Source of the DNA: Girardia tigrina | Taxonomy: Eukaryota | Assembly: GCA_001938485.1 (NCBI GenBank) | Contig: MQRK01218639.1 | Span: forward strand, 15,218-67,327 | Reading direction: 5' to 3' | Length of the DNA stretch: 52,110 nucleotides | Part shown: positions 45,350 to 51,407 of the stretch, in pieces | Layout: the number at the start of each line of letters is the position of its first letter | Position numbering within the stretch: position 1 is the stretch's first letter | The notes under the pieces: model-generated | What the model saw: only the letters and a program-made list of their open reading frames with translations | Told to the model about the DNA's origin: nothing | The model's database searches: none | Made by a program: the position numbers and the translations under genes

Positions 45350-48183
45350 TTCTAATCAAAGTTATGAAATTGTGAAAAATAATATCCTTATTTAAATAAA
45401 AATACAATATAGTAATTTTTATTTTTATTTATATTTTTATTATAAATGTATTATTATCATTATAGATTTAATAATTCAAAATAAAAATATAAAAATTAAC
45501 AAAACATCATCAGTTTTTAATAGTTAACATTTTAAGCATTTGTAGTTAACACATCTCTTATGTAAAGGTTTTTTCGAAACAACGTAATAGTGATGAATAT
45601 TTGAAATATTGATGTTTTGTGTATTGATTGCATGTTTAAATGTTGTTTGTTGATTTTGTATTGTGTCTCTCCTAATCAGATGGATGATTAATATTTTAAT
45701 TCTTATAATCTGAAACTAATTTATTCATATTTAGATTTAATATTCAAATTTTTAATTTAATATTATTGTAAAGCTTAATTAAGTTTATTTTTGTAAATTT
45801 TTAAATAATTAAATCAAATTAATGTTTTAAAATGATTATAAAAAGTAATTTTATTTTGACCAATAAAATTCAAATTAAATATTTTAAATAAAATAATTCT
45901 TTTCAAGTTAGTTCAGATTTCGGATGTGAATTATTAAATATCGATAGATGAATTTAAGCGAAGACATTATTACAGATTGTTAAAGACATTAAATACATTA
46001 TTAAAGATTAAGATAAACATTATCCGAAATGTGATTGCAATAAATTTTGTGACAAATATGTGAGTCCTTGTGCGTCAAACCTTCGGTGTCTTAGTGAGAA
46101 TATGTATAGACGATTTTCTAATTGTGATTTGAAAATTAGCCGAGCGCAGTCTCGAGACTTCCATTGAAATAATCTTTGGACAGAGGTCGAAAGAAAAAAG
46201 GGTTCCGGAGACGATGGGTGTCTGACGATCTCCGAGACACTTAGAAAAATGAAATTGACTAATCTAAGTCAAACAAGTCGCGAAACAAACAACAACGAAA
46301 TTTCGTTTTTGTCACGCACTGCGGTTTTCTGAGCCACGCATTCCTTGCGTTCTTGTTCTGCGTGGCCACACGTGTTTGCTTATTTGGATTTAAACCACGC
46401 GTACTTCGCTTATACAAAAAACCTTGTTTAAAATTAAGCCACGCATCTTTCTCACGAATTGGTCTTCATTTTGTTTGATTAAAGCCACACGATTTTACTT
46501 TGTCACGGATTTTACGGATAGTATAAAAACTCAATAAAAACAGCTCAAGACGTATTAAGCTATATCTTCTTACAGGTAAAACGTCATTTCTTTTTCTCAA
46601 AACGTATTAAGCTATATCTTCTTACAGATCTCGAATTTATTCGACGAAATTTCCTAACTCCGATTATTTGAGATAAAGCCTCGGATCCGATACCAGTTTG
46701 ACCGTGTGGAGATTTTCAACAAACATTTCGGATAGAGCTTCTTTTGGTGAAAGGTTAAACTTAAATTTTTCTCAAGATAATTTCTTTTAAAATTAATATA
46801 TTTTTAAAATCAATAAATTTTCGTAATTATATTAAATTAATAATTTTTATCTATAAAATTCAAACTCTTGGTAACTGGAGAACGGTGTTTCCCAGTTCCA
46901 TAATATTCCTACAATACACACAGGGATCTTGTTATATTTTTCTTTTCAATAAATTGTAATTTGTAAAAATTTTTATAAACATTTTAATAAATATTTTTTA
47001 AAAGAAGTCTCATGTTGTTTATTCATTATTGATTGATTTATAAATTCTAATTTATATAAATTGATTGTCAGGAGAATTATTTACTTCTCCTTTTGTTACG
47101 ACGTTTGGGAAATATAGAATTGACCCTTGTACGTAACAAATTCAATTGAAAATTTCAGTTCAAAACTTATTTTAAAAAATCAACTTCGCATATTGTCGAT
47201 CGAAAAAAGTTAAACATAAAAGAAAATATCCTTCGCATTATAACTTTTACACACACAAAAATCAATTAATCAAACTGAAAAAAAATATTTATATTCAAAA
47301 CTCGATTCCCTTTTTTGCCAATGAAAGAAGGCCATGACATAAGAGATTTTATTAAACAAAACACTACGAAGTGGTATTTTAAATTAAAAATCAAATTTTA
47401 ATTTATTTATTCAATTTATTAAACAATAATTCATATTTATTGTTTTTTATATACAACTCGAATATTCACCTCTGACACAAATCTTTCTTTTAGATTTTTT
47501 AAATATTTTATTGTGTTTTTGTTCATGTTTTGTCAGATTGGTTTTATAAGATCAAAAGTCTTACTTGGACTTTATAAATCACTTAAAACATATGTGATAC
47601 CGACTGCCAAACCGAGTGGCGGCAACCAACACCTCTTAATTGTGTGAGAAATTGTCGGTTCGTTCGTTCGATTAGCTCCATCCTTTGAAGCGACGACAAC
47701 ATGGGTCGACTCTCCTGTCGACTGCTGCGTGAGGCTCGCAATCCCCAATAACGGGAACGAGTGTTATACTACCCCCACATATTATGTAATCTGTGTAGAT
47801 TACATAAGTTCGTTTCGAATTAGGGGAATAACTGGCGGAATGGATGAATAAAATTGTTAATTAATAAAAAATGAAATAATTAATTATTAATTGATTGAAA
47901 TTCAATCAAATCAAATTTAATCATTTATTTGTTAAATAATTTATTTAATAATTCATTTATTCTTTACTTTATTTACTTTTTATTCATTTATGTAATAATT
48001 GATTTATTGATTCACTAATTTATTTATTCATTGATTGAATAAATAAATTAATTATTTAATGAATGAATGAACTAATTTAAGAATGAATAAATGTTACATG
48101 TTAAATTTATTTCTTAAATGAAATATTTAACATGAAAAAATATAGATAATTATTTGTTTAAATAATATCTATTTTAAAAGTAT

Positions 48184-51100
48184 TGTTCGGTTTTCGTTTT
48201 TTTTAAATTAAAATTCATTAAAGAAAAATTTAATTTTTACCATTAAATTTATAAAAAACTAAAAAAAAATTAAAAGAGACCGCACGGACTGTCGGTCGAT
48301 AATATCGAGCGATTGTTGGATGTTGTGCGGAGATATTGCGGGTGTGGGTTGGGGAGAATGTGTGGAAGATCGGTCACTGAGACCGGCCTGATAGAAACTG
48401 ACGAGACGAGTATGTTTCCAGGAGGAGTGTCGACCGACGATTTGGCCTTTCAACGCGGACTATCGACTGATGATTTCTGTTTCCATAGTACCAACAATAA
48501 CACAACCACTCGGAGACCGATGAAAAAATGGGAAACCAAAACCCGGAAACTAGCTTTAGAGTGACTATTGAGGATTGTCGAGAAGAGCTGGAAGAAAGTG
48601 AGTCCGCGGATTTAGATGGGATTCATGCCGTTTGGGGGCGACTGTTACGGTGGGGTGGGCGGGTTCGACTTGGTCGAATTGCTCGAGACCGAGACCGACT
48701 GCCACACGAGACTCCTGACCGTGCAGGCCATTGAGATGTGTGTCTCGAGCTGCAAGGAGTTCCTGGTCACGGCCCAACAACCCGCGGGTCCGACCAGGAC
48801 ATTCGTGAGCCACTCGCAGAACTTCGCGGCGGGNGACGCCTGCTCCATTGGATGGTGGCGGATCCCGCGCCTGTTGTCAGGTTGCGGCTGATCCGGTGCG
48901 TGTGTGTGCTCGTGAGGAATGCCCCGTATCATCGACTGAGGCCCGTATTGGTGGGCGATGTCGTCTGGCAGCTGAGGGCGCTGTTTCTCGAGTCATCGCG
49001 TGACGACACCGCTGTCAAATGTGCCATTTTCGATTGCTTCTCGGCCTTGGTCGGGCTGCAGTCGGTCAGTTAAGAGACAAGGCGGTGATAGAGACCGCGC
49101 GTCTATTCCGGCGACTCTCATGTGCACTCGCACCTCGTCCAGTCGACAGGCCAGAATTCCCAGCACCGCTGCGGACCAGATCAGACATCAGAGTCACCGT
49201 CAATGTCTTCCACGACTATCGTGTTGTCAGTCGAGTCCCACAGTCGACGACCGAGTTAGCTGGTGCAACTGTGTGTCCGTGTGGCGCACCCGGCACTCGT
49301 GGAGCAACTGTGGGCGGGTGCACTCAGTCCCGAGTCCTGGGAGCGCGCCATCGACCCGCTGGTGGACAAGGTGGTGGCGGAGAGCAGCCAGCAACCAGAC
49401 AGCGAGTTGCGGTGTCGAGCGCTCCGGACACTGAGCGCCATGCTTCCGCAGCACTGCTCCATTATCGGGCCCAGCATCGACACTGTCAAGAGGACGCTCC
49501 TCGCGTGTCTCGATGAGTCGATACCGTACCAAGTCTCCAAGCAAACTGCCGCGCTCCGTTCCGACGTGCTGAGAGTATTCTCTGGTTTGCTGGGCACTCT
49601 GGATAACAAGAAGGTCAAGCGGTACCTCGGGATCATGCAGGACTGTCAGACGGTAGGTAACGAGAACAACCAGACCGGGGATAATTGTGTTGGAATGGAG
49701 ACGGAATTGTCGTCAGGAATCTCGTACTTCTCTTCTTCATCCAGTGTCATCAATGGTGTTAGCAACATATCATCCAACATTGATCTCGTGTGTGACTGGT
49801 GGAATTCTTTCTTGCCAAGTGTGGTACAGTGTCTCCAGGATGACAATGAAAGTGTGCGGCGTTCGGCAGCGCAATGTCTATGCTTTATGTGCGAGCCAGT
49901 GTTGGAGCACATGATGGAACGGACGGCCATCACGAGTCACTGGCACATGTTGCTCACTATGTTCCGAGACCCGAGCTCGTCTGTCAGCTGCCAGGCCATC
50001 TGGTTTCTCGGGTACTGGGTCGCTTTGCGTCCACTGAACTCTGACGCCGATTTTATCCGCGCTCTCATCGGAACAAGTTCACGCCTCTGCAATGCCGCAC
50101 TCGCCGACTCTTCCTTGTATCTTGAGTGTGCCAACGCCGCATGGACTCTCAGTAATGCCATAGAAGTATTAGTGGCACACAAGGAGTGCCTGTTGTCATG
50201 TTGCCAACAACAGGAGAAACTCGAGACACCCACAGGATGCACTGTTATTGTCATGGAGTATTTGACAGACGTCGATTGTGTCGCCCGATTAATGCAGCTC
50301 TTTTGTGATTTATGTGGCGTTAAAAAGGCCGGCCAAGTGTCTGCATCAGTTCGTATTCATGAGAATGCTATCCGAGGTTTGGGGTATCTGTGTAGATTCA
50401 TAGATGAGAACATGATTTTTCATCTATCGACAGGCGGTCTTTTGAATCTCGCATCAGAAACATTTTCCAAAGCCGTTCAGCTGTCCGATAAAGCTGGAAG
50501 GGTTAAGGTCAAATAGAATGCTTGTCTTTCTGTCAGTCATGTTTATCACAATCGTTTTTTTAATTTCAAAAAATGACGTTTTTAATCTTCATAAGTTAAA
50601 CGCCGCTCTCGTCTCTACGGTCACTGGTGATCGGTATTTTAAGGTCCGTAATAATTCTTTAGTTTCGATTAACACACTGATCGATTGTGGTGGTCGTTCG
50701 TCTTTTGGGGAACATTTGTTTGATATGATTATCGGTCCATTGGCCGAAACTTGTCTTTCAGTCACAGAAGTTCATCGTCATTGTCTTTGTCTCTATTTAT
50801 TAAATTTCACATTGTTGAAACTCGTCAATCTAATCTCACAAAGTGATCTTGATTTACTCGCCACAAGATCCGATCTTTTGTCTTTTCTGTTCACTGTATT
50901 CTCTGAACAATTACCGTCGATTTGGAGACATTTACGTAATCTGAACCGATCGTTTAATAAGCAAGCTCTCATCATGCAAACTCTAATGCTCAAACTGTCA
51001 GTGTCGGCTACCTGTGAAGAGGTCGATCTTCTGTTGTCTAACTTAAGGATGAATCTTGACGTCAATTGGGTGTCAACAAATTCCAGTAAGCTGGCAATCG

Positions 51101-51343
51101 ATTTATTTGACTCTATCGGTCTGTTTCTGGGGCGCGAATTTGTGACGATGAGATTATCAGACAAGACGAGAACGCTCTCAATTTCTGTGATTCTCTGTCA
51201 GACGACGAAGGTCTCATGACCAAGAGGCCGGGTACAGCTCTGATTTTCAGCCAAATTTATGACTAGTTTCTTTGGGGTTAATTTAATGCATTTGTATTAC
51301 AAATATAATTTTTTGTTCTTTAAAAAAAAACGAAAACCGAACA
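48184..51343. mobile_element. Non-autonomous TIR element (TGT...ACA ends, 5-bp TSD) carrying a HEATR6 copy
   Basis: TGTTCGGTTTTCGTTTTTTTTAAA at 48184 and TTTAAAAAAAAACGAAAACCGAACA ending 51343; AGTAT on both flanks (48179-83, 51344-48). Confidence 0.85.
48280..51219 (+). pseudogene. HEATR6: HEATR6 (DUF4042 + C-terminal HEAT repeats), intronless, with stops and frameshifts
   Basis: KTRKLALE*LL..KK..*MGFMP, SCKEFLVTA, RCVCVLVRNAPYHRLRP, NAAWTLSN, NAIRGLGYL, KVK*NAC, YFKVR match HEATR6 motifs (NAPYDRL, KVRWNAC, NFKVR); N-terminal part absent. Confidence 0.85.
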
Positions 51344-51407
51344 AGTATTGTTAGTGAAAAATAAATGTTAATAGATTTGTGATTCGTTGTTACAAGCTAT
51401 CCGGGCA

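What the first reader, a model, noticed from the sequence alone, without database searches (positions are those of the whole stretch)
48179..51348. Host gene packaged in a transposon shell: TGT...ACA TIRs, 5-bp TSD, HEATR6 cargo, no transposase
Seen: ~24-bp inverted termini (TGTTCGGTTTTCG-T-run-AAA) at 48184 and 51343 with an exact AGTAT duplication on both sides. About 100 bp of AT-rich subterminal DNA lies on each side, around ~2.9 kb of GC-richer, intronless HEATR6 coding sequence. The two ends are not direct repeats, so this is not an LTR-flanked retrocopy. Known: TG...CA ends with 4-6-bp TSDs are the signature of retroviral-type DDE integrases (Gypsy, Ginger1/Ginger2-TDD; Polinton integrases also leave 5-6-bp TSDs). 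Pack-MULE-like capture is known for other superfamilies. Inference: a Pack-type gene-capturing element mobilised in trans by a Ginger-like or other rve integrase.
Basis: partly seen in the sequence, partly recalled or inferred. Interest (0 to 1): 0.82.

Follow-up and report, generated by a model that had tools for sequence, protein, structure and literature searches.

The report
Broken HEATR6 copy inside transposon ends
A 3.2-kb insert in a flatworm-like genome has the inverted ends and 5-bp flanking duplication of a cut-and-paste mobile element, but it carries only a truncated, intron-free and now broken copy of the host gene HEATR6, making it a plausible, single and unclassified case of gene capture by a transposon.

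Summary
Window 48184-51343 is bounded by 24-25-nt inverted termini (TGTTCGGTTTTCG plus a T-run). The 21-mer is exact on both arms, with none expected by chance. An exact AGTAT lies on both sides. No ORF inside has a transposase or integrase domain.

The GC-rich core (50% GC against 31% for the rest of the window) is HEATR6-derived, with a DUF4042 domain and a HEAT repeat. Its nearest named relatives are flatworm HEATR6 proteins. It is colinear with those proteins, so no introns are seen.

It is not a whole gene. Only about the C-terminal two thirds is present, and it is broken by at least three premature stops and several frame changes.

The Ginger-like label is not supported:
- The TIRs are too short.
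- The fifth terminal base does not fit TGTNR.
- A 5-bp TSD fits only TDD-4/5.
- The Maverick copies in the same window have different ends.

The direct repeat really runs 10 nt (AAGTATTGTT), so a 9-10-bp TSD cannot be excluded.

No second copy, partner element or empty site could be sought.

Best reading: a dead, non-autonomous TIR element carrying a processed HEATR6 fragment. The enzyme that moved it is unknown.

The parts
48179..48183 (.). Left copy of the target-site duplication, AGTAT. The identical stretch really extends over 48178-48187, AAGTATTGTT.
48184..48207 (+). Left terminal inverted repeat: TGTTCGGTTTTCG, then T8, then AAA.
   Evidence: I6; exact 21-mer, 0 expected
48208..48268 (+). 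Left AT-rich subterminal DNA. Together with the TIR it makes 85 nt at 13% GC. It has no ORF and no convincing similarity elsewhere in the window.
48269..51219 (+). GC-rich core: an intron-free, 5'-truncated, broken HEATR6-derived sequence (one part, first base to last). Similarity to flatworm HEATR6 is firm over 48837-50976 and weak but colinear back to about 48670. The first ~400 nt have no detectable relative. One N inside was left as it stands.
48840..49064 (+). Match to Pfam DUF4042, the HEATR6 signature domain. It covers profile positions 106-177 of 182.
49809..49895 (+). Match to the Pfam HEAT repeat (41.4 bits).
51220..51319 (+). Right AT-rich subterminal DNA. It could be the 3'-UTR of the copied message or shell sequence.
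51320..51343 (-). Right terminal inverted repeat (T-run of 9 in place of 8).
51344..51348 (.). Right copy of the target-site duplication, AGTAT. The identical stretch really extends over 51343-51352.
51408..52110 (+). Neighbour, not part of the element: a gag-like ORF that runs off the window. Its last residues begin a CCHC zinc knuckle. The element sits 64 nt upstream of its ATG.

Best explanation
The unit 48184-51343 is one inactive, non-autonomous DNA element of the terminal-inverted-repeat kind.

Shown: it has 24-25-nt inverted ends and an exact flanking duplication. It has no enzyme gene of its own. Its interior is an intron-free copy of roughly the C-terminal two thirds of a flatworm-type HEATR6 gene, and that copy is broken.

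Inferred: the ends are the only parts that matter for movement. An enzyme made elsewhere in the genome bound the two ends and inserted the unit at staggered cuts 5 nt apart in the target. Repair of those cuts gave the AGTAT duplication. The target was the leader just upstream of a retroelement gag gene.

The TG...CA ends with a 5-nt stagger fit a DDE enzyme of the integrase/IS3 type best. The enzyme is not identified, and a 9-10-nt stagger (Mutator- or AcademH-like) is not excluded.

The HEATR6 sequence is passive cargo. Because it lacks introns and its 5' third, it most likely began as a reverse-transcribed, 5'-truncated copy of the message that came to lie between the ends. That could have happened by insertion of a retrocopy into a short resident element, or by copying during repair. 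It decayed only recently: it carries few breaks for a sequence that is just 59% identical to its nearest relatives.
For: - TIR: 25 nt at 96% complementarity. The 21-mer is exact on both arms with 0 expected by chance.
- TSD: exact AGTAT on both sides, p about 0.002.
- No transposase, rve or other enzyme domain in any ORF of either strand.
- HEATR6 identity: DUF4042 and HEAT repeat. The best named relatives are HEATR6 of Calicophoron, Macrostomum and Heterobilharzia.
- Colinear with those proteins with no room for introns. The one AT-rich stretch that looked like an intron is coding in the relatives.
- Truncation: similarity starts at about residue 529 of the 1298 residues of P0014. Only about 400 nt of core lie upstream of that point. 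No HEATR6 similarity exists anywhere else in the 52-kb window.
- Broken: homologue alignments run through stops and change frame.
- Composition sets the core apart from the shell and flanks.
- The host is flatworm-like, so the cargo fits the host lineage.
- Gene fragments inside integrase-related TIR transposons have a precedent in GingerRoot.
Against: - Only one copy is seen. There is no second pair of these termini in the window. The eleven metagenome matches stop after 21-22 nt and are unpaired. There is nothing in viral contigs.
- No autonomous partner is identified. The Maverick integrase in the window belongs to elements with different ends.
- The TSD length is ambiguous, 5 against 9-10 nt.
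- Capture of an intron-free copy is not what DNA-level Pack-type capture usually yields.
- The N-terminal part of HEATR6 is so poorly conserved that two flatworm orthologues do not align there. 'Truncated' therefore rests on the lack of space rather than on lack of similarity.
- Several frame changes lie in the GC-richest part and could be assembly errors.
Confidence: 0.55

Rival explanations
1. Same kind of element, different enzyme class. The true duplication is the 9-10-nt AAGTATTGTT and the TIR starts at CGGTTTTCG. This would be a Mutator-like (Pack-MULE-like) or AcademH-like non-autonomous element.
For: The identical flank really is 10 nt long, p about 3e-6 for 10 nt by chance. MuDR makes TSDs of 4-10 bp and AcademH of 9-10 bp (text quoted). 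Pack-MULEs are the classic gene-fragment carriers.
Against: With that boundary the right end keeps 3-4 extra bases (AAC/AACA) that happen to pair with the last bases of the left duplication. The 5-nt reading needs one coincidence fewer and gives perfectly symmetric ends. The TIRs are far shorter than in typical MULEs. No MULE transposase was found in the window.
Confidence: 0.12
2. A solo LTR, or another integrase substrate derived from an LTR retroelement, whose body was largely replaced by HEATR6 cDNA. A retroelement integrase would have inserted it, giving TG...CA ends and a 5-bp duplication.
For: TG...CA ends and 3-6-bp TSDs are the LTR signature. Gypsy-type elements and a gag ORF lie in the window. 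An intron-free cargo fits passage through RNA.
Against: - No second copy of this sequence in direct orientation exists in the window.
- About 95% of the unit is host-gene-derived.
- A 24-nt perfect inverted repeat is long for LTR ends (own knowledge).
- The bases after the right end do not start with the TGG of a usual primer-binding site. The 10-nt flank identity also shows that the unit is an insertion of its own, not the 5' LTR of the neighbouring gag element.
Confidence: 0.1
3. This is the host's ordinary HEATR6 locus: its large last exon or exons. The inverted repeats and direct repeat are unrelated to mobility, and the breaks are sequencing errors.
For: Upstream exons could escape detection, because the N-terminal ~520 residues are not alignable even between two flatworm orthologues. 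Only one relative per piece exists in 5.8 billion protein clusters, so there is no sign of amplification. Some frame changes sit in the GC-richest stretch.
Against: - The exact 21-nt inverted ends and the 5-10-nt direct repeat fall precisely at the edges of the GC-rich block, with 0 expected by chance.
- The premature stops are base substitutions inside well-aligned stretches.
- The surroundings are all mobile elements.
- There is no HEATR6-like exon within 48 kb upstream.
Confidence: 0.08
4. A LINE-made processed pseudogene. It would be a 5'-truncated cDNA with an A-rich tail, flanked by the 10-nt duplication, and the inverted ends would be fortuitous.
For: The cargo is intron-free and 5'-truncated. 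There is an A9 run near the 3' end. A 10-nt direct repeat flanks the unit.
Against: The A-run is followed by 13 further bases before the repeat. The whole 21-24 nt recurs as an exact reverse complement at the other end, which target-primed reverse transcription does not produce.
Confidence: 0.05
5. An assembly chimera or contaminant: foreign or cDNA-derived GC-rich sequence joined into an AT-rich contig.
For: There is a sharp composition jump, with GC3 up to 0.83. A single N lies inside. The unit is intron-free.
Against: - A chimera does not create a flanking duplication plus inverted ends.
- The ends do not resemble any sequencing adapter I know (own knowledge, not tested).
- The cargo's affinity is with flatworms, like the host gene in the window.
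- The 3' third of the cargo has host-like composition.
Confidence: 0.05

Closest known systems
GingerRoot non-autonomous elements carrying gene fragments (Selaginella; PMC6839031)
   Same: TIR-bounded elements with occasional TG..CA ends, related to integrase-type enzymes, that often carry host gene fragments and no enzyme gene.
   Different: GingerRoot makes 6-bp (6-8) TSDs and its ends are mostly TA..TA. It was described in a plant and, by transposase similarity, in cnidarians and fish. Its captured fragments are genomic. Here the TSD is 5 (or 9-10) nt and the cargo is intron-free.
Ginger2/TDD (TDD-4, TDD-5 of Dictyostelium; animal Ginger2; PMC2836005)
   Same: TGT... ends. TDD-4/5 make a 5-bp TSD. 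The family prefers AT-rich targets.
   Different: Ginger2 TIRs are 50-180 bp against 24-25 nt here. The consensus terminus is TGTNR against TGTTC here. Animal Ginger2 make 4-bp TSDs. No Ginger transposase was seen.
Pack-MULEs and other Pack-type transposons of plants
   Same: A shell of transposon ends around host gene fragments, no transposase, moved in trans (own knowledge).
   Different: Pack-MULEs have long TIRs and 9-10-bp TSDs. Their fragments are copied from genomic DNA, introns included, and often come from several genes.
Bacterial IS3 family, IS2 subgroup (end architecture only)
   Same: Short TIRs, TG...CA ends and a 5-bp TSD.
   Different: These are prokaryotic and carry their own transposase. 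This is a resemblance of ends only. The eukaryotic IS3EU has TA..TA ends and 6-bp TSDs.
Solo LTRs of Gypsy-type retroelements
   Same: TG...CA ends, a 5-bp TSD, and no coding capacity for an enzyme.
   Different: Solo LTRs do not consist of about 95% host coding sequence. They have partners in direct orientation, and none is seen here.

Membership tests
Ginger1 | TIRs of about 40-270 bp | tested here: not met
   The TIR is 24-25 nt and similarity of the two ends stops there. Criterion from PMC2836005.
Ginger1 | 4-bp TSD, CCGG or CCGT | tested here: not met
   The TSD is AGTAT, 5 nt.
Ginger1 / Ginger2 | Termini TGTNR | tested here: not met
   The terminus is TGTTC on both arms. The first four bases fit, but the fifth is C, not a purine.
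Ginger2/TDD | TSD of 4 bp (animals) or 5 bp (TDD-4/5); target RTATAY | tested here: inconclusive
   5 nt fits TDD-4/5 only. The target reads AAGTATTG, a partial fit to RTATAY. The boundary is ambiguous between 5 and 9-10 nt.
Ginger2/TDD | TIRs of about 50-180 bp | tested here: not met
   The TIR is 24-25 nt.
Ginger1 / Ginger2 | Integrase-like DDE transposase, in the element or in a partner with the same ends | not testable with these tools
   No rve domain lies inside the element.
Polinton/Maverick (as the mobilising element) | 6-bp TSD and AG...TC termini; same ends as the resident Mavericks | tested here: not met
   The ends are TG...CA and the TSD is 5 nt. Criteria. The window holds no other match to the 13-nt terminus with up to 2 mismatches at the Maverick repeats.
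Pack-MULE / Mutator-like | 9-10-bp TSD | tested here: inconclusive
   A 10-nt direct repeat exists if the boundary is shifted, but the ends then become asymmetric.
Pack-MULE / Mutator-like | Long TIRs; captured genomic fragments with introns | tested here: not met
   The TIR is 24-25 nt. The cargo is colinear with the protein and shows no intron.
Solo LTR | TG...CA ends and a 4-6-bp TSD | tested here: met
Solo LTR | Related copies that flank gag-pol in direct orientation | tested here: not met
   None in the window. The rest of the genome is not testable.
LINE-made processed pseudogene | Poly(A) directly abutting the 3' TSD; no inverted ends | tested here: not met
   The A9 run is followed by 13 nt, and the exact reverse complement lies at the other end.
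HEATR6 (the cargo) | DUF4042 domain plus HEAT repeats | tested here: met
   DUF4042 scores 36.9 bits (cut-off 27) over its last 72 profile positions only. HEAT scores 41.4 bits. Flatworm HEATR6 proteins are the best named hits.
HEATR6 (the cargo) | Full-length, open reading frame | tested here: not met
   Only about the C-terminal two thirds is present. It is interrupted by stops and frame changes.

The most novel reading that the evidence does not exclude
This would be the first sighted copy of a flatworm family of integrase-type (TG...CA, 5-bp TSD) cut-and-paste elements with very short TIRs. The family would shuttle reverse-transcribed host gene copies: a 'Pack' element whose cargo came through RNA. 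That would link reverse transcription and DDE-integrase mobilisation in one vehicle. The GC-rich cargo (GC3 up to 0.83 in a 31% GC genome) might even have been brought in from another, GC-richer flatworm.
Probability: 0.15. Interest if true: 0.65.

Novelty: new member of a known kind. Interest (0 to 1): 0.38.

Why it matters
Gene-fragment capture by DNA transposons is well documented in plants and rarely in animals. A family of such carriers in a flatworm-like genome crowded with Mavericks and Gypsy elements would be a route for duplicating and moving host coding sequence. It would also add an unclassified TG...CA/5-bp TIR family to the integrase-related transposons.

As it stands this is one decayed copy. 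It matters mainly as a lead for a genome-wide census. It also warns annotators that this HEATR6 model is a pseudogene inside a mobile element, not the functional locus.

Tried and rejected
(1) Intron hypothesis. A 94-nt AT-rich GT...AG stretch between the two longest ORFs restores the frame, and I first took it for an intron. I tested the two candidate exons apart and built no joined model. Relatives' alignments then ran on through the stretch in the first frame. It is coding sequence with breaks, not an intron.

(2) Other copies of the termini. None in the window. The metagenome scan gave 11 loci, each a single 21-22-nt match without a partner or further similarity, taken as chance. Viral contigs gave none.

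(3) Empty site or paralogous flanks in the window: none.

(4) N-terminal HEATR6 exons elsewhere in the window: none. The test is weak.

(5) Similarity of the left subterminal DNA to the long window repeat: a low-complexity match, rejected on alignment.

(6) A matching shell around the IFT22-like island at 38-40.5 kb: no clean TIR.

(7) Rfam and tRNA scans of the window: nothing.

(8) Solved structures: only weak armadillo/importin matches and no HEATR6 entry.

I did not try another route.

(10) Literature linking Ginger elements to planarians: none in the library.

(11) Cross-phylum transfer: the one clear host gene in the window is also flatworm-like. No foreign phylum is needed.

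
Full report
**1. What is there**

Window 48184-51343 (3,160 nt) begins TGTTCGGTTTTCG, T8, AAA and ends with the reverse complement of the same string with T9.
- The repeat finder gives 25-nt arms at 96% complementarity (I6).
- The 21-mer occurs exactly twice in the 52-kb window, once at each end in inverted orientation. 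No match appears in 100 shuffles.
- AGTAT lies directly outside both ends. The chance of that is about 0.002 at this composition.
- The two ends share nothing beyond the TIR and are not direct repeats.

One amendment is needed. The right flank continues TGTT, the four bases that also open the left TIR, and both AGTAT copies are preceded by A. The identical stretch is therefore 10 nt, AAGTATTGTT. From a single copy one cannot prove whether the duplication is 5 nt with TGTT...AACA ends, or 9-10 nt with ends starting CGG. The 5-nt reading gives perfectly symmetric ends and needs one coincidence fewer, so I prefer it.

**2. The inside**

- An 85-nt left stretch has 13% GC. A 124-nt right stretch has 31.5% GC. 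They enclose a 2,951-nt core of 50% GC. The rest of the window has 31% GC.
- Third-position GC falls from 0.83 to 0.41 along the core.
- Pfam finds DUF4042, the HEATR6 signature domain, over its last 72 profile positions at 36.9 bits. It also finds a HEAT repeat at 41.4 bits.
- An exhaustive HMMER search of 1.84 billion representatives with the longest ORF (417 aa) found only 12 proteins. Two are short unnamed fragments from run assemblies at 59% identity. The next are HEATR6 of the flatworms Calicophoron, Macrostomum and Heterobilharzia at about 28-34%. The remainder match through the HEAT repeat alone.
- A word search with the part covered by the best fragment found that fragment and nothing else.
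- No ORF of either strand has a transposase, integrase or other enzyme domain.

**3. Intron-free, truncated and broken**

Intron-free:
- 624 residues of the Calicophoron protein align over 1,909 nt, and 609 residues of the Macrostomum protein over 2,140 nt. That leaves no room for introns.
- An AT-rich 94-nt GT...AG stretch that restores the frame looked like an intron. I searched the two flanking candidate exons apart and made no joined model. Several relatives then aligned straight through the stretch in the upstream frame. It is coding sequence, not an intron.

Truncated:
- Similarity starts at about residue 529 of the 1,298 residues of P0014, weakly but colinearly. Only about 400 nt of GC-rich core lie upstream of that.
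- No other part of the window resembles HEATR6.
- The N-terminal ~520 residues do not align even between two flatworm orthologues. The truncation therefore rests on lack of space, not on lack of similarity.

Broken (counts only, as required):
- At least three premature stops lie inside well-aligned stretches. Five appear if the whole homologous stretch is read in one frame.
- There is at least one frameshift.
- A composition-and-stop tracing of the sense frames suggests up to seven frame changes, most of them in the GC-richest 5' third.
- One frame change coincides with the single N in the cargo. I left that N as it stands, and that change cannot be judged.

The breaks are few for a sequence only 59% identical to its closest relatives. 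Most of that divergence therefore arose under constraint, and the decay is recent (inference). Some frame changes could be consensus errors.

**4. Surroundings**

The window is not human. Its one clear host gene is an IFT22/RABL5-like small GTPase ORF at 39457-40050. Its single hit in the word search is Macrostomum lignano at 48% identity. The IFT22 name is from my own reading of the sequence; Pfam gives Roc/Ras only.

The rest is mobile DNA:
- Maverick/Polinton genes: type-B polymerase split into at least two ORFs, an A32-like ATPase, an adenovirus-type protease and a double-jelly-roll capsid.
- A second Maverick piece with an rve-plus-chromo integrase.
- A Gypsy RT-RNase H.
- Two other small TIR elements.
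- Immediately right of the finding, a gag-like ORF whose end begins a CCHC knuckle.

Low GC with abundant Mavericks and Gypsy elements matches what is reported for planarians. The planarian assignment is an inference. The cargo's flatworm affinity matches the host, so no cross-phylum transfer is needed.

**5. Mechanism**

Shown:
- The ends and the flanking duplication.
- The absence of an enzyme gene.
- The nature and state of the cargo.
- Insertion 64 nt upstream of a gag start.

Inferred:
- This is a non-autonomous TIR element placed by an enzyme supplied in trans. That enzyme makes staggered target cuts, most simply 5 nt apart.
- TG...CA ends point to the integrase/IS3-type DDE enzymes.
- The cargo is passive. 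Being intron-free and 5'-truncated, it probably started as a reverse-transcribed copy. How that copy came to lie between the ends is open.

**6. Comparison with known families**

- Ginger1 fails on TIR length, on TSD length and sequence, and on the fifth terminal base.
- Ginger2 fails on TIR length and the fifth base. It fits on TSD only through the Dictyostelium TDD-4/5.
- Maverick fails on TSD length and on termini, and the resident copies share no terminus.
- GingerRoot shows that integrase-related TIR elements do carry gene fragments, but it makes 6-bp TSDs.
- Pack-MULE fits only if the 10-nt repeat is the TSD, and it fails on TIR length and on introns.
- The solo-LTR signature (TG...CA, 5 bp) is met, but no direct-repeat partner exists in the window and the body is host coding sequence.

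I file it as an unclassified non-autonomous TIR element with captured cargo. That is a new member of a known kind.

**7. Limits and conduct**

I did not seek another road.
The Maverick proteins were scanned against Pfam only.
- Slip to report: my first notebook entry gives the coordinates of two cargo ORFs and describes the stretch between them as a possible intron.

**8. Verdict**

The structure is real and well bounded. The 'Ginger-like Pack element with a host gene' reading is only partly borne out. Confidence is 0.55 that this is a dead non-autonomous TIR transposon with a processed HEATR6 fragment. Interest is 0.38.

Noticed in passing
window 13000-46000, e.g. 15349-15738 (+), 18382-18720 (+), 34044-34511 (+), 41184-42229 (-): Maverick/Polinton-like gene set: double-jelly-roll capsid, adenovirus-type protease, A32-like packaging ATPase and protein-primed type-B polymerase. 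The polymerase is split into at least two ORFs. I did not define the element's ends.
   Followed up: partly
window 2657-6295 (-): A second Maverick-like piece on the minus strand. It holds an integrase (rve plus chromodomain, 3882-4709, with an N-terminal part in a neighbouring ORF up to 4914), an ATPase-like ORF at 5978-6295, and a 379-aa ORF without Pfam match that is partly duplicated (2333-2766 resembles 3446-3871 at 87%).
   Followed up: partly
window 6424-8112 and 10952-12642; 26624-27291 and 44730-45589: A 1.69-kb direct repeat at 97.6% identity encloses 2.8 kb. Diverged partial copies lie in inverted orientation further right. These are candidate long terminal repeats of nested or tandem Mavericks. 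They do not start TG or end CA.
   Followed up: partly
window 39457-40050 (+): An intron-free IFT22/RABL5-like small GTPase ORF (Pfam Roc/Ras) whose only hit is Macrostomum lignano at 48%. It sits on a GC-richer island between the Maverick ATPase and polymerase genes and contains a 20-nt N run. It may be a host gene between two elements or cargo of a Maverick. No clean TIR surrounds it.
   Followed up: partly
window 28739-29852 and 30725-32008: Two further small TIR elements. One has 30-nt arms (TATACAGGGTGCGG...) with TA at both edges, in Tc1/mariner style. The other has 18-nt arms (TATTAGGTGTATAACTTA). Both interiors are partly N, and I left them untouched.
   Followed up: no
window 24294-26300 (+): Gypsy-type reverse transcriptase and RNase H ORFs of 44-49% GC. 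Like the HEATR6 cargo, they are much GC-richer than their surroundings.
   Followed up: no
window 1492-2058: A 567-nt near-perfect palindrome: 157-nt outer arms at 94% complementarity and 114-nt inner arms at 83%.
   Followed up: no
window 48269-51219: A strong 5'-to-3' fall of third-position GC along the cargo (0.83, 0.68, 0.61, 0.41). The 3' third has host-like composition and the 5' part is far above it. This is unexplained. It could be a property of the parent gene or a sign of a GC-richer source.
   Followed up: partly
window 47572-47760: A 190-nt GC-richer patch in the AT-rich left flank. It has only short minus-strand ORFs and no Rfam or tRNA match. Its nature is unknown.
   Followed up: no
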